Below are positions 1 through 46,687 of a stretch of DNA of 64,000 bases, piece by piece. How positions within the stretch are numbered: the stretch's first letter is position 1; each line of letters begins with the position of its first letter. Where the stretch lies: assembly GCF_006345805.1 (NCBI RefSeq), contig NC_043011.1, positions 39,754,464 to 39,818,463 on the forward strand, read 5' to 3'. The DNA is from Octopus sinensis (taxonomy: Eukaryota). A program made the translations under genes and the position numbers. Below the pieces are notes generated by a model that saw nothing but the letters and a program-made list of their open reading frames with translations, had not been told where the DNA came from and made no database searches.

Positions 1-46
1 ACGCACAGGCTCAAACGGCTGTTCGTGTTCTTCATCGACACCAACT
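1..46 (-). CDS. SLC9A6/7/9: NHE exon start (C-terminal tail), cut by the window edge: VGVDEEHEQPFEPVR
   Basis: ttccag|A GTT GGT GTC GAT GAA. Completes the Arg codon from the previous exon; the IRVGVD motif is typical of this subfamily. Confidence 0.9.
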
Positions 47-379
47 CTGGAATAAATCAAAGGAAACATTTCGAATATGAGTTTGCTGCTGTTACTATTG
101 TTGGTGTTGTTATTGTTAATAATTTTACTCTTGCTTTTGATAATGATGATGATGATATTTAAGCTATGTCAGCTTGACCTAGCAAGTCTGTGATTAACCA
201 TATTTTTCAGATCTAACATGCTCTTAATGTTTTAAGATGGTAGTTCCTAATGTGGAAGATTTGGCTGCTGTTTCTAGCAGATTGAGCAACCACAACCATA
301 CAGATCAATCATGCAAGCTGTAGCACTCAGGTTGTGTATAGCCCTCTATCACTGTTTGTATGGCCTGTCATGACTCTTT

Positions 380-2157: not shown

Positions 2158-2311
2158 CTGATCTTGAGCCACTGTAACATGGGCGTGGTCATACTTCCAC
2201 ACACTATGACTGTCACAAGGACAACCATCATGATGGCAGATACCATGTACTGTCGGGCTGCCGTTGACGTGTTTCGAATGGCTAGAGCAAAAGCGATTGC
2301 TCCTCGTAAAC
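2158..2311 (-). CDS. SLC9A6/7/9: NHE exon: GLRGAIAFALAIRNTSTAARQYMVSAIMMVVLVTVIVCGSMTTPMLQWLKI(R)
   Basis: tttacag|GT TTA CGA...ATC AG|gtatga. 154 nt. GLRGA-AFAL motif. Confidence 0.97.
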
Positions 2312-3335: not shown

Positions 3336-3447
3336 CAGCAAACATCATCATGTGTTGGAAAGCAAAACTAATTTTATTCTTCCGTCCTAAATTTAGCAAA
3401 TAGGACAGCGGGTAAACATTAGAAAATCTTGCTATAATTATTGCAAA
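3336..3447 (-). CDS. SLC9A6/7/9: NHE exon: [37 protein letters not shown](G)
   Basis: ttccttaacagtaattcat|TTT GCA...GCT G|gtaagt. 112 nt. The frame is kept only if the intron ends in AT. Confidence 0.9.
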
Positions 3448-4449
3448 ATGAATTACTGTTAAGGAAAATAATTAATGTCTGATAGAGTTATAGTTTTATA
3501 AATATATTCTAGATTCAGTTCTATAAATAACAGGAACCACACAGAAAATCTATCGGAAGGAAAACAGAAGGAAAAAAATTGCCATTTTCACATACAGTTA
3601 TGGAAAATGATATACAAGCAATCAAGTGGACTCAATAAGGTGACCAGTTGACCAGTTTTGGTTGGGTCCCTATAAATGTGCATTTCAGAGCCCCTAACCT
3701 TGCTAAATAAATAAATAAATAAATCCATCTAGTCATCTATCTATCAGTCCTTCTGTCTAGGAATTTATCCTGGACTTAGTGAACTCAAGAGTATGTCCAA
3801 TCTCCAAAATATGATAATCACTTCTTTGACTCTACCAACTATCCTCACCTGCCACATCTTTTAACCCTCTTGTTACCATATTTTTGTTCAGATATGCTAC
3901 TTCTGTATCAATTAATTTTGGAAATAATTTAGAATTTAGTAAAATAACTTTGGCATCATTAAGCTAGTGTCTGGAATATAGATTAACACAAAATTTTGAT
4001 GGAAGGTTTTAACTTAGATCCCTTTGAAGAAAATATTTGTATTATAGGACCAGGGATGACCTCAAGCAGGTTGGTATCAAAAGGTTTAATCCATGTGTTA
4101 CCATAATTCCATTAAAAAGCAGTTTCTGTATCAATAATTTTGAAAATAATTTATAATTTAACAAAATGTCTATCATTGTTAAGCTGGTGTTTAGAACATA
4201 GACTAGCACAAAATTTTGATGGATTATTTTAATTTGGATTACTTTAAAACATAAAGTAATAAATTCCAGAGCACCAGGGGCAGATTCAGGTAGGTTGGTT
4301 TCAAAAAAGTTAAGTACCACAATCACCTACAGTCACTGTCCTCAACCACAATTCTCTGTCAATTATCACTAAGGTTTCTGTTGAACCTACATCAAACCTG
4401 CACTGTCTCCAACACCCAGACCAATAAGGACATGACAAAGTAATTTCTC

Positions 4450-4678
4450 TTAACCCTTTAACTTTCAGATTACTCTTGTCAACTATAATGCTTGTTTATT
4501 CCCACTGTTTTGAATTAATCATGCACTATCTTGTAGCTTTGAAATTCCAATGATATGATTGTTTATTTTAGGGATAGCATTGCAGGGGAGGTATGAGAAG
4601 CAAAATCTGACCAGTTTGAACATAAAACAGGTAGAACTTTTGATTCAGATATGATCAGTTTAAATGCTAAAGGATCAA
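4450..4678 (+). mobile_element. ~230-bp TTAA-flanked MITE family. Further copies at ~9252-9481, 21000-21206, 23207-23432, 30405-30624, 36401-36533, 56262-56462
   Basis: Shared body and TIRs ttaaccctttagcatt...aatgctaaagggttaa; copies occur in both orientations. Confidence 0.85.
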
Positions 4679-4802
4679 GGGCACAAATTAAATATATCAA
4701 GGAATCAGTTACATATGATGACCTTCCTTCCTGAATATGGATGACACAAAACTTATATCATTATGCTTGATGACCCCTCATAATAAAACAATATCTGAAA
4801 GA

Positions 4803-5038
4803 CTTATTTCTTTATTGCCCACAAGGGGCTAAACATAGAGGGGACAAACAAGGACAGACAAATGGATTAAGTCGATTACATCGACCCCAGTGCGTAACTG
4901 GTACTTAATTTATCGACCCCGAGAGGATGAAAGGCAAAGTCAACCTCGGCGGAATTTGAACTCAGAACGTAGCGACAGACGAAATACAGCTAAGCATTTC
5001 GCCCAGTGTGCTAACGTTTCTGCCAGCTCGACGCCTTC
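4803..5038 (-). mobile_element. Young tRNA-derived SINE (family B)
   Basis: Head ggcg.cgagctggcagaaacgttagcac, B-box-like gagttcaaattcc, core gcctttcatcct..cggggtcgataaattaagtacc. Many other copies, e.g. 15640-15850, 17065-17290, 28655-28870, 29177-29612, 46140-46345, 46895-47103. Confidence 0.85.
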
Positions 5039-5063
5039 ACAATATCTGAATAATAATAATTGA

Positions 5064-5094
<31 letters not shown>

Positions 5095-5096
<2 letters not shown>

Positions 5097-5245
5097 ACAA
5101 CATCAAAAAATACCTTAGGAATGAGAACCCAGGTTCAAAATTTTCCCAAGACGCCTGATGAAGGCTGGAGGGTATATCAACCGAAACGTTGTGTTAACAA
5201 CAAACAAGATAAGGACATATACCCGTCAAATGTAAATAATGTACA
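5095..5245 (+). mobile_element. Penelope-like element terminal-repeat remnant with a minimal hammerhead (5150-5195)
   Basis: GACGC-CUGAUGA-A-GGCUG(10 nt)CAACC-GAAA-CG-UU-GUGUU; follows a (TAA)n tract. Confidence 0.6.
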
Positions 5246-5288
5246 GTTTATATGGTATCTTAGAAAAATATGTTAAGAAAAAGGATAC

Positions 5289-5402
5289 AAATGCTGAAAA
5301 TATAAAAATTGCATGCCATTTCATGGCTTGGAAAGTAAATACAGACACTCCAATATAGAGGAATACAAAATTTTCAGCTAAAAAGTTGCATAGCTCGAAC
5401 AA
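5289..5402 (-). CDS. SLC9A6/7/9: NHE exon: LFELCNFLAENFVFLYIGVSVFTFQAMKWHAIFIFSAF
   Basis: ttgcag|TTG TTC...GCA TTT|gtatcctt. 114 nt. Followed by a U12 GT donor. Confidence 0.95.
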
Positions 5403-6883
5403 CTGCAAAAAGAAAGTCAAACAAGAATGAGAAAACACATATGACAAATAAAAAAAAAAGCAATTTAATAATTTACAAGTGAATATAATAATAATAATAA
5501 TAATAATAATATATATGCATGTGTGTGTGTATGACGGTTTTTGGTAAGCAGCACTGATTTTTACAATTCTGTAAATAATAATAATAATAATAGTATTTTA
5601 TAAGCATAAAGCTTGTAAGTGATTACTGAACAATGACTAAAGAAAACAGTCTAATAATGGGGCATATAAGCCCCCGACAGAAAAAGTAGGTTTTCCTGTT
5701 TGCATAGGGAAAACCTACTTTTTATAAATCCCACTATTAGACTATTTTCTTTAGTCATTTCACAGTGATCTCTTATAAGCTTTAAGCTTATAAAATACTA
5801 ATATATATATATATAGCTTATAAAATACTAATATATATATATATAGCTTATAAAATACTAATATATATATATATATATATAATTAAAATTATAATTAAGG
5901 GCATCTAAGAGATACACCCTATGCTAGAGATAGCAGTCAAAACTTGACTCTAAAACCATGTTATCTCTAGCATGGTAGTATCTCTTACATACCCTTAATT
6001 ATAATTTTAATAAATAATTAATACCTATAAGGTTTTTATTCTCATGCTGGCCACTTGATATGATCAGTATTTTAAATAACGATCTTATCCTTATTTATAT
6101 ATATACACACACACACACATATATATATATATACACACACACATGTATATATATGTACATATATATACAATATTATGTGATTGATCAGACTATTGGATAC
6201 TATTATGCATTGCTGGTCTCAAGGCCCTTTGCATTGTTTTAGCTTTTGAATGGTGTCACCCTGCTGGCTAGGTGAGCAAACCCACATTACTCCTGATCAG
6301 AAGTCTAGTCTGTTGCAGGCTTACTCATTTACATCTGGGAGGTATGGAGCAACATGAAAAGAAGTGATTTGCCTAAGAACACAACACGCAGCTGATCTGG
6401 GAATTGAAACCACAATCTCACAATCATAAGTGCAATATGGCTGTCCACAAGACTACGTGCCTTCTCATGTAAATATAAATATATATGCATATGCCCACAC
6501 ACATACAATGTGCTTCTTTCAGTTTCTGTTCACCAATACTATTCACAAAAAAATTTGGTCAGCCCAGGGTTATAGGGGAAGAAATTACCCCAACCTGTTG
6601 CACAGTGGGACTGAACCTGAACCCATGTAGTTGGGAATCAATCCTCTAAACCACACAGCTATGTCTGCACCTTAAATACAATATAACAGTTCAAAGCGTG
6701 TAGTCACTGACAAACAGGTAAACAGCTTTGTGTAGCAAGTTTCAACTTGAAAGAGCCGACTCACAGACAAAAATTCATAATTAGAGTAATTACACCAATC
6801 AGGCTCTAATCATTACATAATGCTTGCCAAACACAGCGGTCTTGATAAAAATCTCACAGAAACACTTGATCCATTTTACTTAC

Positions 6884-6972
6884 TTGTTTTGTCCTCGCTT
6901 TCGATTCTGACGAGAGATTGTTATAAGTATAATGAGCTTGAGTAATACCACAAAATAGGACAGCAACAATTC
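6884..6972 (-). CDS. SLC9A6/7/9: NHE exon: [30 protein letters not shown]
   Basis: tttcag|GA ATT GTT...AAA CAA|gtaagt. 89 nt. [16 protein letters not shown] motif. Confidence 0.97.
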
Positions 6973-11205: not shown

Positions 11206-11311
11206 CTGTTAGTCCAGCAGCTTCGGCAGCTTGGAACGTACTGTAAGACATCAAGAAGAACAGTGCTGTTTCTAATAAAGGATATTCTCGAATCTTTGTA
11301 TATTTTGTCAT
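11206..11311 (-). CDS. SLC9A6/7/9: NHE exon: [35 protein letters not shown](G)
   Basis: ttccttaacttgatttac|ATG ACA...ACA G|gtacgt. 106 nt. AC acceptor. Confidence 0.95.
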
Positions 11312-11352
11312 GTAAATCAAGTTAAGGAAACATACATATGTATATGCATTGC

Positions 11353-11387
<35 letters not shown>

Positions 11388-12824
11388 TAGCAAAATTACC
11401 TGGCATTGCTCAGAAATTTAAAGAATGTTAAAGGAAATAGATATATATATTCTGATAATAAAAAAAAAATTCTGCCAGATGACGTGAATATAAACAAAGT
11501 TATTAAAACAAATCTTGAAATCAATCACAGTTTAATTTTGTAGAACTTCTAAATATACAATGTTTTCAGTGTGTCCTTTAATTCAGTGTGTACAAAGTAA
11601 AAGAGTTTTGGGACTTCCAACTCACGAACATCTTACATATAACTGCCCATGAGAGAAGCAACGAGAAGCAAGATTAAGTCCAACAACTTTGAGAGATTGT
11701 GCTTGAGATTTGCTTATGGAAATAGCAAAACTTAGTTTCACTGGGAACTGGAGCTGTTTAAATTAAGATGGGATTAGTGGGATCTGTGGAATGAAGACAT
11801 CGTCACCCTTATATTTTTGAAGAGAAATTAATTTTGGCATTAAGGACTAAACCTCTTGTTTCATTATTACAATTAAAAAGTGTTTATCTACACTTAAAAA
11901 AAAAAAAAAAGAGGTGGGGTCATACACGTATGACAGACAATTATCCAATATCGTGCTTGTTTCTATCAGAATTGTTTACCTTTAAAGAGAAAAAACAAAA
12001 TTGACGTATACAACAGGTATGTAAAACATGTTTCTGTTTTTTAAAAAGGTAAAAATTTAGTGACACTTCCCCTAGAACCTTTCCTCGAGTAATGAAAAAC
12101 CTTCATGCCAACTTTGGTACAGATTGATCCAGTGGTTTGGCTGTGCAGAATAGGTTGTATAGCTAGGGGGGAAATTTCCAGACGTAATTTCCAGACAGCC
12201 AAATTTGGCACAGATCCAGCAGTTTTGCTGTGCATAGAGGAAACACACACACGCACACAGACAAAAAGAATAGAAGTGAAACAATTAGTGAAATAAATGT
12301 AAAACAATAAAAGTGAAACTATAGTGTTATGAAAAGTGAAACTATTATACTGCTGACATTGTAGGGTAGTTGTGAAAGGCTAGATCTGGCCAACTTGAAC
12401 ATAAAACGGGCAGAATATTTGGGTTGGATCTGGCTAATTCAAATGCTAAAGGTCTACACTTTGAAGGGAACATGTAAAGACAACAGTTTTTTTTTCAACT
12501 AAACAGAGTTCTTTAGAGAGAGAGAGAGAGAAAGAGAAATAGAAACAGAGAAACTGAGAGACAGACAAAGAGAGATTATATTATCATCTTTTAAGCTTAA
12601 CTAAATACTTTCTCCAGTTCTTTTCCATTACAACTGCAACAACCAGGGAATACTCTCCCACCACTTGAATATTTTCTACAAATATTGACCTGAAACAGGC
12701 ATAGCTATGTGGTAGAGATGTTTGCTTCTTAAGTATGTGGTTTTGAGCTTAGGTCCACTGTGAAGCACCTTCGGTAAGTGTCTTCTACTACGGCCCTGAA
12801 GGGATCAGGCCTTCATTGAGCAAA

Positions 12825-12995
12825 GGCTCGTTATCTGGTGCAAAGCGTGCTGTGCATGTTGAGCACTTTGATGGGTGCCGACACAGCTGATGCGTGACCC
12901 TTTGTTGAGAACAGTGTTGGTCAGGGTGTTTGACTAGGATGGTATATCTGTCAAACGGTAACACAGATGTCCTAAGATGAGCTTAGTGTGGACGG
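12825..12995 (+). pseudogene. Diverged 28S rRNA fragment
   Basis: gggtgtttgactaggatggtatatctgtcaaacggtaacacagatgtcctaagatgagcttagtgtggac closely resembles the conserved eukaryotic LSU segment GGGAGTTTGACTGGGGCGGTACA.CTGTCAAACGGTAACGCAGGTGTCCTAAGG.GAGCTCAG.G.GGAC (from memory). Followed by (GAT)n. Confidence 0.8.
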
Positions 12996-14330
12996 ATGGT
13001 GATGATGATGATGATGAGTGGCAGAAACACATGTTGGTCATTTTAACAAACTAGGAGCCTCATAGTCGTACAAGCGGTGTTGTCCATTTCCAGTCATCCA
13101 CAACAAACATGTCTAATCGTGGGGAAATATTTCCTAGCTTGGAAATAGGTAAGGGCTGGCGACAAGCAGGGGCATCCAATGAGAGAAAAATCTACCTCAA
13201 CAAATTCCATCTGACCCATGCGAGCATGGAAAAGTGGACATTAAATGGTGATGAGGATGACATTAACCATAACCATGATGATGACGACGATGAAATGTTC
13301 CAGCTACATTAAACTCACCAGTCTAGTAGGGGTTGCAAATACCATGGGCACTGTCCCTTCTCAAATGACTGACTTTTGGGCTACCAAGACTATTCATAAG
13401 TGTAACAACAATGAAATTAAAACCTTGGTGCAGACCTAAAACAACCAGCTAGCTTTTTCAGACAACTAGCCAGCAGTTTGGGTGCTTTTTAGCAGATAAA
13501 TTTCACTCTGCTGTAAATATTTAGGCCAGAACTTTGGATCCAAGCCATGGTTATTTTTTTTTTACTGCCAGATGTTCAGGCTGGTCATTGATCACACCAC
13601 TCACACCTACCAGAGAGGCCTAACAAAGGTTAATCATCACCTGCGCATCTCTCCTCACCCTAACATATCTTTTCTCTTTCACCTGTTTCAGTTACTGGAC
13701 TGTGGCCATGCTGGAACACCACCTTCAAGGGTTTTTTTTTTCTTTTTTTTTTTAGTCAAACGAATCTAGCCACGATTTATTTTTTAAGCACCCGCTACTT
13801 ATTCTATCATTCTCTTTTTGTTGAATTGCTAAGTTATGAGGGACATAAACAGATCAACACTGGATGCTAACTGGTGGGGTGGGGGGTGTACAAACACACA
13901 CACACACACACATATATATGTGGATAAAGTCACCCTTTGGTCATGAATGACCATGGGGTTGTACCTAGAAAGTTACCTTCAGAGGCACAAGTCCAGGTAA
14001 GGTTGATTATGGAAAACCAACAGTCACCCACGCATACCAGCCTCCCTTCTCCATGCGACTGATGTTATCCAAGGGAAAGGCAAAGGCTGATACAGCTTGG
14101 CACCAGTAATGGCACAGCTCATTTCTACAGCTGAGTGGACAGGAGTAATGTGAAATAAAGTGTCTTGCTCAAGAACACAACACACAACCCAGTCTGGGAA
14201 TTGATGTTACTATCTCATGAATGTCAAAGTTGACTTCAGATAAGACTGAATAGAGTCTGCATGTAGATAATTTTTCCGTTATTGTCGTGGGGTTGAATAA
14301 ACTTCGAAATTTAAAACCACCTTAATCCTA

Positions 14331-15349
14331 TTAATCCCCTTTGTTACCAACATGCCTGAGACTGCTGAATCTCAGGAGATATTTTACTTTTTTCCAGGAA
14401 AAATTTTTTTGGAAAAAGTTTTAGAGGTTTAAAGTTTGATCATTTTTACCCAGTCAGAAAACAAGATTTGGAAGCTGTCATTTTGTGCATGACTGCACAT
14501 GTTGTCAACTGTAAACAAATGAAATACAGGAAGAATTCTGCTTTACATATGCCTAACCTCTCATAACTTTTTTCATATTTTTTTGAATTTTTAGAAAATT
14601 TTTGCGAATTTTTATTCTACATATGGAGTTCATAGGATTATGCAAAAACTAAAAAAAAAAAATTGGTGCATGATTTAAGGCCTGTTTGGCTGTTATTTGT
14701 AGCACATCACACAACCACCTCATAGTTTGTTTTAAGCAATTTAGTTAGCAAAAAACGACCATGTGGCTTGACAGGACAGCAATAGAGGGGTAAGCAGTTT
14801 AGTTTGTAACTATGGAAACAGGCACCTATATGTCAGTGGCTTTCAATTGGCTAAAGTTACTCAAAATTTGCAAAATTTAAAAGCTATTAACTATTTATTT
14901 ATTGATTTATGGTGAAACTGAATTTCATGGCAATGATTACCATACAAAACTACACCAATAAACCAAATTTGAAATCAATTTGAACAAAAATGATCCCATT
15001 TTAATGAACGAACTTTAAAATGGCAAGTGAGTTGGTATTTCGCAGAAAATAAATGGAATCTCAAATGCAGAATAGCTGTGAAATCAGCTTAAAAGATCAG
15101 GTAAATACTCTTAGAAGATGGAAAAATGTGGTTAGCAAACTGTTACAAAGAATCGAAGTCTGTACCTCAGAAATTCCAGCTGAGTGCTCGGTACCATTAA
15201 ACTAACTGACGCTCAACCAGAATTTGAGAGGTATAGGGTCCAATTCTCTGTAGTGGCTTATTGGTTGCTCTTTTTTCATCTTCAAAGGGTATTTACCTAA
15301 TCTTCAAAGGTGGTGTCCTTCAGCAGGAATGTGGTAACAAAAGAGTTAA
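14331..15349. mobile_element. ~1 kb piggyBac-like non-autonomous element
   Basis: TTAA flanks; imperfect TIR c.cttttgttacca. No ORF. Confidence 0.65.
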
Positions 15350-17349
15350 TCCTTTTGAGATCAACCCATCTGAGACTGCCCCTAGCTCTTTGATAGAAAC
15401 ATTCTGTTTAAAGTGATGGCTCCTGGCTCTTTCATTGTAACATTCCTTTTAAAGTTATGGCCCCTAGCTTTTTGATAGAAGCATTCTATTTAAAGTGATG
15501 GCCCCCAGCTTGCCAATAGAAACATTCTGTTTAAAGTGATGGCCCCTAGCTCTTTGAGAGAAACATTCGGTTTAAAGTGATCTGGAATAAAACCCCTCAT
15601 GCTAATTCTTATTGCAAACACCAATTTAATAATTCTTTCTATTAAAGGCACAAAGCCTGAAAATCTGGAAGAAGGGACTAGTTGATTACATCAACCCAGT
15701 GTTTCACTGGCACTTGATTTATCAACCCCCAAAAGGATGAAAGGCAAAGTCAACCTTGACAGAATTTGAACTCAGAATGAAAAGATGGACAAAATATTGC
15801 TAAGCACTTTTGCTTGATGTGCTAACGATTCTGCCAGCTCGCTGCCTTAAACACCAATTTGATAATGACAACATTGTTTTTGAAACTAACTGAATCAAAG
15901 GCAGTATATTTCAACAAAAATATGGCAGTGAAATGGTTAAACATAACAATTTATCCGTCCTCTTTTTAACCCCCACAGCCATCCCACCAAAAGAAAGCCT
16001 TGATATCCACTGTGAGAAACACTGGGCTAAACAATAACAGCTACTACAGGTGTCTTTTTTCCTCTGTGCTACATATCATATACAAAACAGTTTTCAATGG
16101 TAGTTACTCATTTATTCCACAAATAGAAGTCACCTCATCTTAAAACACTAAATTTTTCCATTCACTGTATGGACTGATTAATAATGGAAATATTTTCTGT
16201 GTGCATGTCTGAGTGTTTGTGTATGTGTGATTCTCTGCCTGACTGTGTGTGGGCATGTGTGTGTGTGTGTGTGTTTGTGGATGTGTGTGCGTGCGCCATA
16301 TGGTTTGCCTTACACAATAAGAATTACCTCTCATAAATATGTAAATATTGATATTATTTTTGAAGTTTGAACTATTACATGTTCGTCTCCATTTGCAAGC
16401 TCTATCGTAAAACAAACAAATAATCTTTATTTATTTATTGTTGTTTTAGTTTTCCACTTTGGCACACTTGTTACCGTGCCAGAAAAAAAAGTAGTATTTG
16501 TTCTAGCTCTTTACATTCTGAGTTCAAACCCCACTAAAATCAACTTTGCCTTTCTTTCTATCAGACTTAGTAAACTAAAGTACCATCTCAGCCGGTAGAA
16601 TTGTTGGTGAAACATAAGAGTTTCTCAGTAGGATTTCTTTCAAATCTATACTTTCAGAATTCAAATCCCACTCAGGTCAACTGTACCTTTCATCCTTTCG
16701 GGGTCAATCAAATAAGTACCAGTAATGCACTGGGATCAATGTAATCGACTTAGTCCTCCCCACAAATTTCGGGTCTTGTGCCTAAGAGAAGAAAGGATTC
16801 TTATTATTATTATTTACCCCACTTTTGACTAGGCTCCCATGGCTTTTATGGGTTTTTCCACAAGTAACCTTTCGAAGCGCCTCCCCCTATTGGAAGTTTT
16901 AATTGTTACTTATATTTCATTGTTATCCTGCTTTTGTACACAGACTTTTTCAAACGGACAAAACCCTTTGTAACTTTCATCCTGCGTTTTGTCCCCTTAT
17001 GTTTTAATTGATTTTTGTAAGCCCTTGTGGCCAATAAATGAACAAATTATTATTATTATTATTAAGGCAGTGAGCTGGCAGAATCATTAACATACAGGGA
17101 AAAATGCTTAGTGGCATTCTGTCTGTCTTCATGTTCTGTGCTCAAATTCCACTGAGGTCGACTTTGCCTTTCATCCTACCAGGGTCGATAAAATAAGTAT
17201 TAGTTGAACACTGGGGTGAATGTAATCAGTTTACTCCCACCCTCTGAAATTGCTGGCTTTTAGCCAAAATTTGAAATCATTGTTACCATTAATCAAGGAT
17301 GAAAGGCAAAGTTGACCTCAGAGAAATTTCTGAGGTCAAATTCTGCTAA

Positions 17350-18084
17350 ATCACAATAAATCATGAGTATTCCTTGTGATCATAAGATCTTGGAAAAAGA
17401 ATTGACAAGTTCAGAAAATATAACGATTTGCTGGTTGAAATCATAAAGGTATGGCATCTCAAGGTGGTTACAACACCAGTGATTATAGGAGCACTTGGAA
17501 TGATAGAAAAGAAACTGAAAGAGAATGATGCCTGGTTTACCATTTCTGTAAGAAATGCAAGAGAATGTTTTAACTGGTATGTCACATGTATTGAGAAGAG
17601 AATTGTTGTTGCAAGAACGATTACCATGTAAATGTTCTTTTTCTTTGTTGTTTTTTTTTCTCTACAAAACATCATTTGAGTTTGTAAATGAACAATCCAG
17701 TGTATTGATTTTAATGGCCTATCAATATAAACAGTGAGTTTTTTGCCCTAGGTGTCGGGAAGACACTAGGCTCATAGACTTGGATAAATGGTAATAGTAA
17801 TAAGAAGAATCCTTTCTACTAATGACCCCAGTGTTCAGTTAATACTTATTTTATAATAATCTCAAATTTTCAAACAAACTCATAATTTTCTTATGTTTTC
17901 TTACACATTCTCTAGAACAATATACTATGTGCAAAACCAAATATATGACACCCTAGGCATAACACCAACATGAACTTCTAATTTGTCTCAAGGTCTCTGG
18001 GTGAGACTTGGACTCATCAACTTGTACAAATACAAAGCAAAAGTCAAACATATAATACTAACAACAACAATAATAATAATAATA
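17350..18084 (+). mobile_element. Decayed R4/Dong-like non-LTR 3' region
   Basis: KYNDLLVEIIKVWHLKVVTTPVIIGALG motif; ends in (CAA)(TAA)n. Confidence 0.65.
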
Positions 18085-18227
18085 TAAGGTTGTTCCAAAA
18101 GTTCGTAGAAAGTCTTGGAAAATAATGGTCTTTATTTTGAGGAATAATTTTTGTTGTTTTTGTTAGTACTTGGCGAGTAAAAATTCAATTTTCGCAAGTG
18201 TTTACGAACTTTTGGGACAACCTAATA
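18085..18227. mobile_element. Mariner-type MITE (~140 bp)
   Basis: TIRs aggttgttccaaaagttcgta and tacgaacttttgggacaacct, with TA flanks. Confidence 0.8.
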
Positions 18228-18263
18228 GTAATAATAAGGCTTTTTTTGCATGTAAAAGGATAT

Positions 18264-18399
18264 CAAAGCTGTTATGCAGCCAATAGCTGCACCGATCACA
18301 AAAGCACCCAAAAAGACTCCAACGAAATTGCCCAGGGAACCAAAGAAAGCATTTGCTTGGTTTTCTCCTCCCGCTGCATGGGCATATTGTTCAACAGCT
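18264..18399 (-). CDS. SLC9A6/7/9: NHE exon: AVEQYAHAAGGENQANAFFGSLGNFVGVFLGAFVIGAAIGCITAL
   Basis: ctacag|A GCT GTT...GCT TTG|atatcctt. 136 nt. Followed by a U12 AT donor. Confidence 0.93.
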
Positions 18400-26728: not shown

Positions 26729-26834
26729 CGAGACAACACTATAGCCACTGCATCATTGAGCACACTTTCACCAAAGACAAGGGCATACAAATCAACATCA
26801 ACATTGAGATCATGGAAAATAGCCAGAATCGTAA
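26729..26834 (-). CDS. SLC9A6/7/9: NHE exon: (V)[34 protein letters not shown](R)
   Basis: tttcag|TT ACG...TCT CG|gtatgt. 106 nt. FGES-LND motif. Confidence 0.97.
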
Positions 26835-32220: not shown

Positions 32221-33378
32221 TCAAACTTCCGTCTTCTCCAAATCAGAGACTTCCGGTCAATCCATCTAAAGGCACCTGGTCCCCACCCCACCCCTACCAT
32301 TCTTCCTGATCACCGATGTCCACAGCAAGTCTATATTTTTTTCTCTCCCTATCTTCCACAACTTACATACATTTGCCGCTAATCGTTTTTAAATGTTTGA
32401 ACTTATACACTAACGAGCTTGCCTTCCCTATCTTATTCTTTCTCTACGAAATTTAATCCCTTTAGGTACCCTCTATCTTTCTCTACGAAGTTTAATTCGA
32501 TCTTCGCCACGCTTTCCCTATCTTATTCTTTCTCTACGAAATTTAATCCCTTAAGATACCCTCTATTCTTTCTCTACGAAGTTTAATTCGATCTTCGCCA
32601 CGCTTTCCCTATCTTATTCTTTCTCTACGAAATTTAATCCCTTTAGGAACCCTCTATCTTCTCTACGAAGTTTAATTCGATCTTCGCCACGCTTTCCCTA
32701 TCTTATTCTTTCTCTACGAAATTTAATCCCTTAAGATACCCTCTATTCTTTCTCTATGAAGTTTAATTCGATCTTCGCCACGCTTTCCCTATCTTATTCT
32801 TTCTCTACGAAATTTAATCCCTTTAGGTACCCTCTATCTTTCTCTACGAAGATTAATTCGATCTTCGCCACACTTTCCCTATCTTATTCTTTCTCTAAGA
32901 AATTTAATCCCTTAAGATACCCTCTATTCTTTCTCTACGAAGTTTAATCCGATCTTCGCCATTCGCGGTTATTCAAAAACGAAATCGCCATTACCATTAC
33001 TATTCCAAATTCAAACTTCCGTCTTCTCCAATCAGAGACTTCGGTCAATCCATCTAAAGGCACTGGTCCCCACCCCACCCTATCATTCTTCCTGATCACC
33101 GATGTCCACAGCAAGTCTATATTTTTTTCTCTCCCTATCTTCCACAACTTACATACATTTGCCGCTAATCGTTTTTAAATGTTTGAACTTATACACTAAC
33201 GAGCTTGCCTTCCCTATCTTATTCTTTCTCTACGAAATTTAATCCCTTTAGGTACCCTCTATCTTTCTCTACGAAGTTTAATTCGATCTTCGCCACGCTT
33301 TCCCTATCTTATTCTTTCTCTACGAAATTTCCTCTATTCTTTCTCTACGAAGTTTAATCCGATCTTCGCCATTCGCGG
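32221..33378. repeat. Hierarchical tandem repeat: ~90-bp units within a duplicated ~790-bp block
   Basis: tcttattctttctctacgaa recurs every 89-91 bp. The ttcaaacttccgtcttctcc block starts at both 32221 and ~33010. Confidence 0.92.
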
Positions 33379-35422
33379 TGCTCCCGCCCTTTCCCACCCC
33401 TACCGCCAATACCGGTGCTCCCGCCCTTTCCCACCCCTACCGCCAATACCGGTGCTCCCGCCCTTTCCCACCCCTACCGCCAGTACCGGTGCTCCCGCCC
33501 TTTCCCACCCCTACCGCCAGTACCGGTGCTCCCGCCCTTCCCACCCCTACCGCCAGTACCGGTGCTCCCGCCCTTCCCACCTACCGCCAGTACGGTGCTC
33601 CCGCCCCTTCCCACCCCTACCGCCAGTACCGGTGCTCCCGCCCCTTCCCACCCCTACCGCCAGTACCGGTGCTCCCGCCCCTTCCCACCCCTACCGCCAG
33701 TACCGGTGCTCCCGCCCCGTCCCACCCCTACCGCCAGAGTACCGGTGCTCCCCCCCCGTCCCACCCCTACCGCCAGTACCGGTGCTCCCGCCCCGTCCCA
33801 CCCTACCGCCATACCGGTGCTCCCGCCCCGTCCCACCCCTACCGCCAGTACCGGTGCTCCCGCCCGTCACCCCCCTACGCCAGTACCGGTGCTCCCGCCC
33901 CGTCCCACCCCACCGCCAGTACCGGTGCTCCCGCCCCGTCCCACCCCTACCGCCAGTACCGGTGCTCCCGCCCCGTCCCACCCCTACCGCCAGTACCGGT
34001 GCTCCCGCCCCGTCCCACCCCTACCGCCAGTACCGGTGCTCCCGCCCCGTCCCACCCCTACCGCCAGTACCGGTGCTCCCGCCCCGTCCCACCCCTACCG
34101 CCAGTACCGTGCTCCCGCCCCGTCCCACCCCTACCGCCAGTACCGGTGCTCCCGCCCCGTCCCACCCCTACCGCCAGTAACCGTGCTCCCGCCCCGTCCC
34201 ACCCATACCGCCAGTACCGGTGCTCCCGCCCCGTCCCACCCCTACCGCCAGCCAGTACCGTGTGCTCCCGCCCCGTCCCACCCCTACCGCCAGTACCGGT
34301 GCTCCCGCCCCGTCCCACCCCTACCGCCAGTACCGGTGCTCCCGCCCCGTCCCACCCCTACCGCCAGTACCGGTGCTCCCGCCCCCCGTCCCACCCTACG
34401 CCAGCCAGTACCGGTGCTCCCGCCCCGTCCCACCCCTACCGCCAGTACCGGTGCTCCCGCCCCTTCCCACCCCTACCGCCAGTACCGGTGCTCCCGCCCC
34501 TTCCCACCCCTACAGCCAGTACCGGTGCTCCCGCCCCTTCCCACCCCTACCGCCAGTACCGGTGCTCCCGCCCCTTCCCACCCCTAACGCAGCCAGTACC
34601 GGTGCTCCCGCCCCTTCCCACCCTACCGCCAGTACCGGTGCTCCCGCCCCTTTCCACCCCTACCGCCAGTACCGGTGCTCCCGCCCCTTTCCACCCCTAC
34701 CGCCAGTACCGGTGCTCCCGCCCCTTCCCACCCCTACCGCCAGTACCGGTGCTCCCGCCCCGTCCCACCCCTACCGCCAGTACCGGTGCTCCCCCCCGTC
34801 CCACCCCTACCGCCAGTAACGGTGCTCCCGCCCCGTCCCACCCTACCGCCAGTACCGGTGCTCCCGCCCCGTCCCACCCCTACCGCCAGTACCGGTGCTC
34901 CCGCCCCGTCCCACCCCTACCGCCAGTACCGGTGCTCCGCCCCTTCCCACCCCTACCGCCAGTACCGGTGCTCCCGCCCCTTCCAACCCCTACCGCCAGT
35001 ACCGGTGCTCCCGCCCCTTCCCACCCTACCGCCAGTACCGGTGCTCCCGCCCCTTCCCACCCCTCCCGCCAGTACCGGTGCTCCCGCCCCTTCCCACCCC
35101 TACCGCCAGTACCGGTGCTCCCGCCCCTTCCCACCCCTACCGCCAGTACCGGTGCTCCCGCCCCTTCCCCACCTACCGCCAGTACCGGTGCTCCCGCCCC
35201 TCCCACCCCTACCGCCAGTACCGGTGCTCCCGCCCCTTCCCACCCCTACCGCCAGTACCGGTGCTCCCGCCCCTTCCCACCCCTACCGCCAGTACCGGTG
35301 CTCCCGCCCCTTCCCACCCTACCGCCAGTACCGGTGCTCCCGCCCCTTCCCCCCCTACCGCCAGTACCGGTGCCCCGCCCTTCCCACCCCTACCGCCAGT
35401 ACCGGTGCTCCCGCCCTTTCCC
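33376..35422. repeat. GC-rich 37-bp minisatellite, ~55 units
   Basis: Unit GGTGCTCCCGCCCC(T/G)TCCCACCCCTACCGCCAGTACC over ~2.05 kb. Confidence 0.97.
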
Positions 35423-35441
35423 ATCTATTTGTGTGTGTCTG

Positions 35442-37343: not shown

Positions 37344-37444
37344 CAGGGTCTGTTGCTGATATCACAGCACCGAAAAAGAAACAATCAGTCAACTGGATTA
37401 GATGCGATATGTTCATTATTCTGGTCAGGCCATACATGATACCA
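37344..37444 (-). CDS. SLC9A6/7/9: NHE exon: GIMYGLTRIMNISHLIQLTDCFFFGAVISATDP
   Basis: ctccag|T GGT ATC...GAC CCT G|gtaagt. 101 nt. Carries the FGA-ISATDP ion-binding motif. Not in the ORF track; translated by hand. Confidence 0.95.
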
Positions 37445-37840: not shown

Positions 37841-39467
37841 ACATACACATACACAGTGATGCAAGTATGTATGTATGTGAACACACACGCACGCACACAA
37901 GATTAAATAAAAATTGCAATGAGTATTTTAGTTGTTTGATAAATTGAATTGCCTAATCTTTGAATTACAGTAAAAGTGGTTGAGTATTCCACAGTCCTGT
38001 GTAGCATTGATGAAATCCTCAAGCAGAATGAGCATGGCACAGTCTGAGAAACCTGACCTTTTGAATTACAAGCACAATCAATCCAACAGGTTCCACTGGC
38101 CTAAGAGGGCAGTAACTCCATATGGGAAGCGCTACAGAGTGGAGAGATCTCTGGTGGCTTTCTCACACACCTAACATTGATAAAACATCAAAATGGGGCA
38201 TGGACTGGAAAGGGCCCCAGAATGAAGAACAGGAAAACTCTTTAGTTCTCCTGGCATGAGACAACCTCTCTAGAGTTAGTGACATAGATAGATAATGTAC
38301 TCAGTATAATCTGTAAAGTGACAAGGCAGACACCCAGCTGTCTAACCAATGTTCAACAAATCATGGATTCCGTAAACTGCAGTGCCAGCTATGCACCTGG
38401 AAGGGCAGTAACATTGTAGAAATATAGTAGAAAAGACCCTTTAGTAATACTATACACAACAGTGAAGGGGAAAGTTATATCCTTCAGCAAGACACTTTAT
38501 TTCATGTTGCTCCAGTCCACTCAGCTGACAAAAATGAGTTGTACCTGTATTTCAAAGGGGCCAGCCATGTCACATTCTGTGTCTCACTGAATCTCCCTGA
38601 GAACAACATTAAGGGTCCGCATGTCTGTGAAGTGCTCAGTCACTTGCATGTTAATTTTATGAGCAGGCTGTTCCGTTAATTGGATTAACTGGAATTCTCA
38701 TTGCTGTAATCAATGGAGTGCTAGTTTTTACATAAAAACCTCTCTAGTGCAAGTGGCATGATAAAATGCACCTAGTCCACACCGTAAGATATACACAACA
38801 ATAAAGCTGGATGGTTTCCTTTGTTATGGTCTCTGCCCAATGATAGGGACCAGGAGCAACATCCTTAATATAGCAAGCATCCGTGATATAAACTTAGTCA
38901 AGGTAGATGCTATACTAAATCCTGGTGAATGCCTCTATGTATGTAAAAGAAAACAATTGTTCATTTTGTTCACTGTGACTTCTGTCGGTGTCTGTGTGTC
39001 AACACATGTTTGTATGCGTTCACCAAGATGAAAAACATATCATAGCTGACAACGTATCATTTGTATTGTTTGGTTCTATGATATTCCTGAGAGACTGTTG
39101 GTGTGTGGTTCACAAGTGCAAGGACGTCTGGTTATATTTAAAACATGGTTGAGAAGTTCACTTCTGTCTCTGTGTTTGTTTCCAAACATGTGTCTCGGAG
39201 TTTGGTTCCAATGCATGGCACTTTGAACATGACCAGCATATATTGAGGGGAGCAGGAAGTCTATAAGAGCCAATGTGGCAGTGTGATTAAGAAGTTTGCC
39301 TTGCGCGCACATGGTTCCAGGTTCAATTCCACCGAAACCTAGAGCTAACAAATGCTGTGTGATGGAAAATTGTTAGAAGACAATTGTAGATAAATGAGTG
39401 TGTGTGTGTGTATATACATATATATAATCATAATACATGTACACACACATATTTACTATGTATACAC

Positions 39468-45731: not shown

Positions 45732-45808
45732 CCAAATACTATACTGGATATTGTGGTACCAATTAAAGCATAAGTCATAACTGCACCAAGATTCCGAAAA
45801 AAATGTTT
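45732..45808 (-). CDS. SLC9A6/7/9: NHE exon: KHFFRNLGAVMTYALIGTTISSIVF(G)
   Basis: ttcttcag|AAA CAT...TTT GG|gtaagc. 77 nt. FFRNLG motif; phase joins the next exon. Confidence 0.95.
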
Positions 45809-46609: not shown

Positions 46610-46687
46610 TCGTTTCATACTGTATCCAGCATTGAAAATAATAACAGGAAGAAGAACATTGAAGAACAACTCTGGATCAAACGTAAC
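46610..46687 (-). CDS. SLC9A6/7/9: NHE6/7/9-type Na+/H+ exchanger, first coding exon found in window (vertebrate exon-3 equivalent): [26 protein letters not shown]
   Basis: Minus strand reads tatgtag|GTT ACG TTT GAT CCA...AAA CGA|gtaagt. 78 nt, phase 0/0. Matches the conserved FDPE-FF-LLP-IIF-AGYS motif. Confidence 0.95.

What the first reader, a model, noticed from the sequence alone, without database searches (positions are those of the whole stretch)
3448..5288. Minor-spliceosome intron with non-canonical GT-AT ends and a decoy AG
Seen: donor GTATCCTTT and branch TTCCTTAAC are textbook U12 signals. The only nearby AG (3457-3456) lies directly after the branch motif; using it adds 8 nt and an immediate TAA. 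The frame-preserving boundary, giving a 112-nt exon, is ...TTCAT|TTT GCA, 11-12 nt from the branch A. Established: U12 introns choose the 3' site largely by distance from the branch point and tolerate atypical terminal dinucleotides. Inference: automated annotation likely gets this wrong, and AG use could couple expression to NMD.
Basis: partly seen in the sequence, partly recalled or inferred. Interest (0 to 1): 0.72.

Follow-up and report, generated by a model that had tools for sequence, protein, structure and literature searches.

The report
Octopus minor-spliceosome intron ending in AT
An ancient minor-spliceosome (U12-type) intron in an octopus endosomal Na+/H+ exchanger gene ends in AT instead of the AG found in every other animal checked; this is a rare but already known variant, and it matters mainly because it appears to have split the gene in the public Octopus vulgaris annotation.

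Summary
On the minus strand, a 114-nt exon (5402-5289) is followed by GTATCCTTT. A perfect U12 branch site, TTCCTTAAC, sits at 3466-3458. The only junction that keeps the reading frame and matches homologues is 3448|3447, so the 1841-nt intron is GT...AT. The AG at 3457-3456 lies 3 nt from the branch A and would give an immediate TAA.

The gene is an intact SLC9A6/7/9-type Na+/H+ exchanger. Ten exons join into a 357-aa Pfam PF00999 core, 100% identical to an Octopus vulgaris protein. It also contains a canonical AT-AC U12 intron (18263-11312).

The same intron, at the same codon boundary, is a U12 GT-AG intron in cuttlefish, Lottia, a catfish and about 15 further loci from unidentified organisms. 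Branch-to-end spacing there is 10-18 nt; the window's AT is at 11. Only the terminal G differs in the octopus sequence.

GT-AT U12 introns are a documented rare subtype, so this is a new member of a known kind. The O. vulgaris model ends exactly at ...SAF, and a second model starts 102 nt later, which supports the annotation prediction.

No RNA evidence and no independent octopus DNA could be obtained. The NMD idea has no support.

The parts
5289..5402 (-). Upstream coding exon, 114 nt, phase 0 (LFELCNFLAENFVFLYIGVSVFTFQAMKWHAIFIFSAF), preceded by ttttgcag
   Evidence: 100% identical to O. vulgaris P0159 residues 379-417
5280..5288 (-). U12-type 5' splice site GTATCCTTT, a perfect match to the consensus
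   Evidence: the same donor at the same codon boundary in L001, L002, L004, L005, L042, L046, L052, L054-57, L068, L077, L078, L079, L080
3448..5288 (-). The intron itself, 1841 nt, GT...AT; it contains an interspersed SINE-like repeat and a ~220-nt internal duplication
3458..3466 (-). U12 branch-point sequence TTCCTTAAC; the branch A (3459 or 3460) is 11-12 nt from the last intron base
3456..3457 (-). AG directly after the branch motif (the 'decoy'), 3 nt from the branch A; using it adds TAATTCAT and gives the stop TAA at 3455-3453
   Evidence: O. vulgaris model P0159 ends exactly here
3448..3449 (-). Inferred terminal dinucleotide AT of the intron (context C-A-T|TTTGCA)
   Evidence: Frame and homology; positionally equivalent to the AG of cuttlefish ...TCATCCAG|TTTGCAATA
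3336..3447 (-). Downstream coding exon, 112 nt ([38 protein letters not shown]), followed by GTAAGT
11312..18263 (-). Second minor intron of the same gene, canonical AT-AC: donor ATATCCTTTTAC at 18263, branch site TTCCTTAAC at 11329-11321, 3' end ...TTGATTTAC
   Evidence: conserved as AT-AC in cuttlefish
18264..18399 (-). Exon ending ...AIGCITAL, upstream of the AT-AC intron
11206..11311 (-). Exon [36 protein letters not shown]; the ATATCCTT at 11285-11278 is coding (E-Y-P-L), not a donor
6884..6972 (-). Exon (G)[33 protein letters not shown] flanks
2158..2311 (-). Exon (G)LRGAIAFALAIRNTSTAARQYMVSAIMMVVLVTVIVCGSMTTPMLQWLKI, GT-AG flanks
26729..26834 (-). Exon [35 protein letters not shown](R)
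37344..37444 (-). Exon (G)GIMYGLTRIMNISHLIQLTDCFFFGAVISATDP
45732..45808 (-). Exon KHFFRNLGAVMTYALIGTTISSIVF(G)
46610..46687 (-). Exon [26 protein letters not shown]; the first exon of the gene inside the window, the N-terminal 171 residues lie beyond 64000
1..48 (-). Start of the next exon (RVGVDEEHEQPFEPVR), cut by the window edge

Best explanation
The feature is a U12-type (minor-spliceosome) intron of an intact endosomal Na+/H+ exchanger gene (SLC9A6/7/9 type). The gene comes from Octopus vulgaris or a very close relative.

Inferred mechanism:
- U11 and then U6atac pair with the perfect donor GTATCCTTT at 5288.
- U12 pairs with the perfect branch site TTCCTTAAC at 3466-3458.
- In U12 splicing the second step takes place about 10-13 nt downstream of the branch A. 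Exon ligation therefore falls after the T at 3448 (C-A-T|TTTGCA), 11 nt from the branch A.
- This joins ...SAF to FAIIIARF... in frame.
- The AG at 3457-3456 is only 3 nt from the branch A, too close to serve as an acceptor.

Evolutionary history: the intron is an ancient bilaterian U12 GT-AG intron. The octopus sequence differs by a G-to-T change at the last intron base, which makes it one of the rare but known GT-AT U12 introns.

Shown here: the sequence signals, the frame, gene integrity, conservation of position and spacing, AG in all comparators, and the mis-split annotation.

Inferred, not shown: that RNA is actually spliced at 3448|3447, that the minor spliceosome does it, and that the T at 3448 is the true and fixed genomic base.
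For: - The signals sit exactly at homology-defined exon edges.
- Ten exons join through this junction into a stop-free 357-aa protein. It scores 246.7 bits on PF00999 against a cut-off of 26.2. All other introns have canonical ends, so the gene is not decaying.
- Homologues have no length difference across the junction. Examples are cuttlefish SAF|FAIFVARF, P0006 AAF|FAVIIARF and P0010 MAF|FAIIIARA.
- The orthologous intron is U12 GT-AG at the same codon boundary in named species: Acanthosepion pharaonis, Lottia gigantea, Tachysurus vachellii and assembly GCA_021962125.1. The same holds in about 15 distinct loci from unidentified organisms, found via metagenome and public-assembly look-ups.
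- Branch-A-to-end distance is 10-18 nt in the orthologues, with a mode of 10-11. The window's AT is at 11 and the decoy AG at 3.
- Literature: SLC9A6, 7 and 9 are listed minor-intron genes, and human SLC9A9 has the donor TTT|GTATCCTTT. GT-AT is a recorded U12 subtype, with 4 human and 3 mouse cases, two of them conserved, and it is cited as experimentally competent. It also appears in conserved animal sets. The optimum branch-to-3'ss distance is 11-13 nt.
- A canonical AT-AC U12 intron in the same gene shows this gene is normally processed by the minor spliceosome in this animal.
Against: - No cDNA, RNA-seq or Iso-Seq junction could be examined.
- No second octopus genome could be reached. The O. 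vulgaris locus returned no DNA because the gene range was too long. The genome-contig scan found nothing. No octopus ORF or transcript spanning the site turned up in the protein searches.
- The O. vulgaris reference is an ONT R9.4.1 assembly combined with 10x Illumina reads, so a base error or a private allele at 3448 cannot be excluded.
- All ~17 or more orthologous introns seen end in AG, so the AT is a singleton in this sample.
- Non-canonical U12 termini often splice less efficiently.
Confidence: 0.8

Rival explanations
1. The T at 3448 is an assembly or base-calling error, or a rare allele of the sequenced individual. The normal octopus sequence would be ...TTCAG|TTTGCA, an ordinary U12 GT-AG intron.
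For: Every orthologue examined has AG at this position. The likely source assembly was built from ONT R9.4.1 reads. The base sits at the edge of a T4 run. No independent octopus sequence could be obtained.
Against: The assembly also drew on 10x Illumina reads, and from my own knowledge residual errors in short-read-supported assemblies are mainly indels rather than substitutions. About 0.6% of U12 introns are naturally GT-AT (4 of roughly 670 in human, back-calculated). From my own knowledge, that is far above a per-base substitution-error rate. The O. vulgaris gene model behaves as if no usable in-frame AG exists, since it stops at the decoy AG's TAA. That is the same assembly lineage, however, so it is not independent evidence.
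Confidence: 0.1
2. The AG at 3457-3456 is really used, by the major spliceosome or by the minor one with a more upstream branch point. The main product would then be a truncated 417-aa protein (the annotated 'isoform X5') or an NMD substrate.
For: The sequence TTATTTTCCTTAACAG looks like a passable U2-type pyrimidine tract plus CAG. The O. vulgaris annotation contains exactly this product.
Against: - GTATCC lacks the +5G and other U1 contacts (my own reading against the U2-type donor consensus).
- The AG is 3 nt from the branch A, while all orthologues use 10-18 nt.
- L054 has the same TTCCTTAACAG, yet its exon begins after an AG 8 nt further on.
- The downstream exons are intact and strongly conserved, which only makes sense if they are translated.
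- The second gene model starting at the next ATG in the same exon is more simply explained as an annotation artefact. The pipeline includes junction filtering with Portcullis and PASA, which from my own knowledge favour canonical junctions.
Confidence: 0.04
3. Another in-frame non-canonical acceptor is used one codon away. The intron would end at 3451 (..TT) or at 3445 (..TT), adding His or deleting Phe.
For: Both keep the frame and lie within 8-14 nt of the branch A.
Against: Homologues show no length change, and the exon begins TTTGCA in cuttlefish, L001 and L077 exactly as here. Nearly all U12 3' termini recorded in Sheth 2006 Table 2 have A at the penultimate position (AC, AG, AA, AT), and TT is not among them.
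Confidence: 0.03
4. The gene copy is a decaying pseudogene, and the AT is simply a disabling splice-site mutation.
For: The AT is unique among the orthologues.
Against: Ten exons have no stop or frameshift. All other splice sites are canonical. Identity to Lottia and cuttlefish orthologues is 75-76%, with a full PF00999 match.
Confidence: 0.02

Closest known systems
Non-canonical GT-AT U12-type introns (for example human/mouse DEADC1 and SLC24A6; Sheth et al. 2006, PMC1557818)
   Same: Perfect U12 donor and branch site, first dinucleotide GT, last dinucleotide AT, and a 3' end set by distance from the branch point. Subtype differences between orthologues amount to a single nucleotide, as reported there.
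   Different: Different gene and a different phylum. Here the change is seen only in the octopus sequence against AG in cuttlefish, gastropods, a fish and many others. There is no RNA support yet.
Minor introns of vertebrate SLC9A6/SLC9A7/SLC9A9 (MIDB; Olthof et al. 2019, PMC6717393)
   Same: Same gene family, with several U12 introns per gene. A GT-type donor preceded by TTT (human SLC9A9 TTT|GTATCCTTT) and AT-AC donors after a Leu codon match the two positions seen here. The catfish orthologue has the intron at the identical codon boundary.
   Different: The catfish intron examined here ends in AG. I did not verify the 3' ends or exact positions of the human and mouse introns.
Orthologous intron in the cuttlefish Acanthosepion pharaonis (GCA_903632075.3)
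   Same: Same codon boundary, donor GTATCCTTTT, branch site TTCTTTAAC, 10 nt from the motif to the intron end, and the exon begins TTTGCAATA.
   Different: It ends in AG, is 7374 nt long rather than 1841 nt, and was annotated correctly at this junction (P0156).

Membership tests
U12-type (minor-spliceosome) intron | 5' splice site matching /[AG]TATCCTT at the first intron base | tested here: met
   GTATCCTTT at 5288-5280, starting at the first base after the homology-defined exon end
U12-type (minor-spliceosome) intron | Branch-point sequence TTCCTTRAY close to the 3' end (optimum 11-13 nt) | tested here: met
   TTCCTTAAC at 3466-3458; the branch A is 11-12 nt from the last intron base
U12-type (minor-spliceosome) intron | No polypyrimidine tract between the branch site and the 3' splice site | tested here: met
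   The interval is AGTAATTCAT, 10 nt and purine-rich
U12-type (minor-spliceosome) intron | Canonical terminal dinucleotide pair (GT-AG or AT-AC) | tested here: not met
   The ends are GT...AT. Termini are not the defining feature of the class, and GT-AT is a recorded subtype.
U12-type (minor-spliceosome) intron | Orthologous intron at the same position is U12-type in other species | tested here: met
   Cuttlefish, Lottia, catfish, GCA_021962125.1 and about 15 loci from unidentified organisms
U12-type (minor-spliceosome) intron | Excision depends on U11/U12/U4atac/U6atac snRNPs | not testable with these tools
   This needs an experiment. Indirect support comes from a canonical AT-AC U12 intron in the same gene and from the report that 83% of human minor introns are conserved in octopus.
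GT-AT non-canonical U12 subtype | mRNA junction shows removal of an intron that begins GT and ends AT | not testable with these tools
   No transcript data were accessible. The junction is inferred from frame, homology and spacing.
GT-AT non-canonical U12 subtype | The genomic base at the last intron position is really T | tested here: inconclusive
   T in the window. No independent octopus DNA was obtained.
SLC9A6/7/9-type Na+/H+ exchanger (Pfam PF00999) | Full-length match to the Na_H_Exchanger transmembrane domain above the curated cut-off | tested here: met
   246.7 bits against a cut-off of 26.2, profile positions 41-375 of 375. The best named relatives are NHE6/7/9 proteins, and the window's exons are 100% identical to O. 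vulgaris 'hydrogen exchanger 9 isoform X5'.

The most novel reading that the evidence does not exclude
The AG-to-AT change is real and fixed in octopods, and it makes this minor intron a deliberately weak, rate-limiting splice. Output of an endosomal Na+/H+ exchanger important in neurons would then be tuned by minor-spliceosome activity, through intron retention or occasional use of the adjacent AG with NMD. That would be a lineage-specific regulatory switch rather than a neutral substitution.
Probability: 0.1. Interest if true: 0.55.

Novelty: new member of a known kind. Interest (0 to 1): 0.3.

Why it matters
Biologically this is a small addition. It is one more natural GT-AT U12 intron, this time in a cephalopod, with a clear polarity: AG in all comparators, AT in octopus. 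It illustrates that the minor spliceosome picks its 3' site by distance rather than by an AG.

The practical consequence is larger. The public Octopus vulgaris annotation appears to cut this conserved NHE6/7/9-type gene in two at this intron, and it also mis-models the AT-AC intron in the same gene. Expression, orthology and single-cell analyses that rely on that annotation would therefore treat one transporter as two truncated genes.

More generally, minor introns, especially those with non-canonical ends, deserve a dedicated pass (for example intronIC-style scoring) in cephalopod annotations.

Tried and rejected
**Searches that led nowhere**
- Independent octopus DNA or RNA for the site. The read-through ORF 5226-5447 is not on record. 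The O. vulgaris locus was returned without DNA because the gene range is 145.6 kb. A genome-contig scan with the 3' splice region, with N at the key base, found nothing. The third protein search returned only short non-octopus fragments. The swordfish protein P0170 was not on record.
- Primary papers. Dietrich et al. 2001 and 2005 and Levine & Durbin 2001 are not held in the library. Their results are cited only through Sheth 2006 and Turunen 2013.
- Rfam and ARAGORN gave no RNA genes in the window, so the intronic repeat is not a recognisable tRNA.

**Ideas considered and rejected**
- ATATCCTT at 11285 as a third U12 donor: it is coding sequence, E-Y-P-L.
- Other AG or AC acceptors near the 3' end: all are out of frame or badly placed.
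- A U2-type rescue of the decoy AG by shifting the donor: no GT exists at the offsets needed to restore the frame (my own reading of the sequence).
- A-to-I editing creating an AG acceptor: editing the AA at 3454-3453 would add 5 nt and break the frame, and editing the terminal AU cannot give AG (my reasoning, not tested).
- Pseudogene: rejected on exon integrity.

Full report
**1. What is in the sequence**

Read on the minus strand, the region contains these features:

| Feature | Coordinates | Detail |
|---|---|---|
| Upstream exon | 5402-5289 | 114 nt, phase 0, preceded by ttttgcag; encodes LFELCNFLAENFVFLYIGVSVFTFQAMKWHAIFIFSAF |
| Donor | 5288-5280 | GTATCCTTT |
| Branch motif | 3466-3458 | TTCCTTAAC |
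| AG next to the branch site | 3457-3456 | Exon start at 3455 reads TAA immediately |
| Downstream coding sequence | 3447-3336 | 112 nt, TTTGCAATAATT...; encodes [38 protein letters not shown]; followed by GTAAGT |

Joining 5289 to 3447 keeps the frame. Every other AG or AC near the 3' end is out of frame or badly placed. The intron is therefore 1841 nt and reads GT...AT. The one refinement is that out-of-frame AGs also lie just inside the exon, at 3433-3432 and 3429-3428.

**2. Is it more than chance?**

Motif counts alone are unremarkable. RTATCCTT has 4 matches in the window against 6.9 expected. TTCCTTAAC has 2 matches against 0.55 expected. Placement is what matters. Two minus-strand donor motifs begin at the first base after exon ends defined independently by protein homology. 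Both branch motifs sit 9-10 nt before the corresponding exon starts. That arrangement is not a chance event.

**3. The gene**

I mapped full-length relatives onto the window. Ten minus-strand exons were found:
- 46687-46610
- 45808-45732
- 37444-37344
- 26834-26729
- 18399-18264
- 11311-11206
- 6972-6884
- 5402-5289
- 3447-3336
- 2311-2158

They join into a stop-free 357-residue protein. It matches Pfam PF00999 (Na+/H+ exchanger) at 246.7 bits against a cut-off of 26.2. An eleventh exon begins at 48-1 and is cut by the window edge.

Seven introns are ordinary GT-AG introns. One is a textbook AT-AC U12 intron: donor ...GCTTTG|ATATCCTTTTAC at 18263, branch site TTCCTTAAC at 11329-11321, and 3' end ...TTGATTTAC|ATGACA at 11312. 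The ATATCCTT at 11285 is coding sequence.

The best named relatives are NHE6/7/9 proteins. The window's exons are 100% identical to 'hydrogen exchanger 9 isoform X5 [Octopus vulgaris]' from GCA_951406725.2. The window therefore comes from O. vulgaris or a very close relative. The gene is intact, which rules out a pseudogene.

**4. Comparative evidence for the junction**

The intron lies at exactly the same codon boundary, with a GTATCC-type donor, in these named organisms:

| Organism | Donor | 3' end |
|---|---|---|
| Cuttlefish Acanthosepion pharaonis | GTATCCTTTT | TTCTTTAAC+TCTCATCCAG\|TTTGCAATA |
| Limpet Lottia gigantea | GTATCCTTTT | GCCTTAAC+TCTGTCTTAG\| |
| Assembly GCA_021962125.1 | GTATCCTTTT | TTTCTTAAC+17 nt ending in AG\| |
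| Catfish Tachysurus vachellii | GTATCCTTAC | GTCCCTGAC+TGAAGATCAG\| |

About 15 further distinct loci from unidentified organisms show the same intron. All ~17 or more 3' ends that could be read are AG.

The distance from the branch A to the last intron base is 10-18 nt in these orthologues, most often 10-11. The window's AT is at 11 and its AG is at 3.

A few lineages have a U2-type GTAAGT intron at this site, and many have no intron. That is the usual pattern of U12-to-U2 conversion and intron loss. The octopus intron is thus an ancient bilaterian U12 GT-AG intron in which only the terminal G differs.

One comparator, L054, also has TTCCTTAACAG. Its homology-inferred exon start follows an AG 8 nt further on. 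An AG hugging the branch site is therefore tolerated and ignored.

**5. How it most likely works**

This is inference from established knowledge of U12 splicing (Turunen et al. 2013; Sheth et al. 2006).
- U11 and U6atac recognise the donor, and U12 pairs with the branch site.
- The 3' site is chosen mainly by distance, with an optimum of 11-13 nt.
- Non-canonical last dinucleotides, including GT-AT, support splicing, often less efficiently.
- The T at 3448 is 11 nt from the branch A, in the context C-A-T|.
- The neighbouring AG is too close to be used.

**6. Relation to what is known**

SLC9A6, SLC9A7 and SLC9A9 are listed minor-intron genes with several U12 introns each. Human SLC9A9 has the donor TTT|GTATCCTTT, and the AT-AC donors follow a Leu codon, matching the two positions found here.

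GT-AT U12 introns are documented: 4 in human and 3 in mouse, with DEADC1 and SLC24A6 conserved between the two. They also appear in a pan-eukaryotic survey of conserved non-canonical minor introns. This finding is a new member of a known kind, not a new kind.

**7. The annotation prediction**

The O. vulgaris protein P0159 ends exactly at ...IFIFSAF. That is the product expected if the AG at 3457-3456 is used and TAA follows. In that annotation the next gene model (222 aa, weak PF00999 hit) starts 102 nt after the first one ends. In the window, 102 nt after the TAA is the in-frame ATG at 3351, which begins MMMFAG....

This assumes the window is colinear with that assembly. The 100% exon identity supports the assumption, but I could not check it on DNA.

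The same model also replaces the AT-AC intron by a cryptic GT-AG pair and loses 23 residues. The published pipeline used STAR/minimap2, Portcullis, PASA and EVM. These tools favour or require canonical junctions; that is my own knowledge, not a test made here. By contrast, the cuttlefish model, whose intron ends in AG, crosses this junction correctly.

**8. What remains open**

No RNA evidence and no independent octopus DNA could be reached. The likely source assembly is ONT R9.4.1 combined with 10x Illumina reads. An assembly error or a private allele at 3448 therefore remains possible, and I put it near 10%.

Natural GT-AT introns make up about 0.6% of U12 introns (4 of roughly 670 in human, back-calculated). 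From my own knowledge, this is far more frequent than residual substitution errors in assemblies supported by short reads.

- The AG is 3 nt from the branch A.
- The donor is a poor U1 site.
- The downstream exons are under obvious coding constraint.

**9. Verdict**

Novelty is modest. The main practical value is correcting a split gene model in a reference genome.

Noticed in passing
window 11312-18263 (-): A second minor intron in the same gene, canonical AT-AC (ATATCCTTTTAC ... TTCCTTAAC+TTGATTTAC). It is AT-AC in cuttlefish too, but a GT-AG U12 intron in Lottia (GTATCCTTTT...TTCCTTGAC+CTGTTTGTAG). GCA_021962125.1 has a GT-AG intron there with a U12-like donor (GTATCTTTG). The catfish intron looks U2-type (GTATCACC...TTTATAG). 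This amounts to subtype switching and conversion at one orthologous position.
   Followed up: partly
O. vulgaris GCA_951406725.2 gene models (P0159 and the next model); window 3351-3455 and 18293/11278: The reference annotation appears to split this NHE gene in two at the GT-AT intron. It also replaces the AT-AC intron by a cryptic GT-AG pair, losing 23 residues ([23 protein letters not shown]). The cuttlefish model P0156 and model P0006 also skip sequence around the intron that is AT-AC in cephalopods.
   Followed up: partly
window 33376-35423: A C-rich 37-bp minisatellite, about 55.6 copies at 94% match (CGGTGCTCCCGCCCCTTCCCACCCCTACCGCCAGTAC). It produces the GC 0.48-0.60, strongly negative GC-skew block inside the 37344-26834 intron. 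A 91/180-bp tandem repeat sits next to it at 32424-32961.
   Followed up: partly
window ~4800-5040 (-), and 8 further sites (15753, 29250, 29470, 43749, 46263, 47013, 50063, 50249): An interspersed SINE-like repeat with a tRNA B-box-like core (GAGTTCAAATTCCGCCGAGGT). Nine copies occur in the window against 0 expected, one of them inside the GT-AT intron. Neither ARAGORN nor Rfam recognises it.
   Followed up: partly
window 5271-5279 (-): A branch-site-like TTTCTTAAC lies only about 10 nt downstream of the U12 donor (GTATCCTTTTTCTTAACAT). It is probably a coincidence of the T-rich donor tail.
   Followed up: no
window 3913-4250: A ~220-nt tandem duplication inside the intron (75-nt cores at 3954-4028 and 4174-4248, 79% identical).
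   Followed up: no
L054-L057, L061-L063, L065-L067 (metagenome contigs): A cluster of closely related loci shares GTATCCTTAC...TTTCCTTAACA[G/A]TTAACAG at this intron. One of them (L054) has an AG directly after the branch motif, like the octopus. The organisms were not identified.
   Followed up: no
L044, L049, L050, L059, L060: The same intron position is occupied by short (62-85 nt) U2-type introns (GTAAGT, GTAATC or GTATGA ... YAG). These are apparent U12-to-U2 conversions in unidentified lineages.
   Followed up: no
window 38477-38484 (+): An ATATCCTT match on the plus strand, inside an intron of the minus-strand gene. It was not examined.
   Followed up: no
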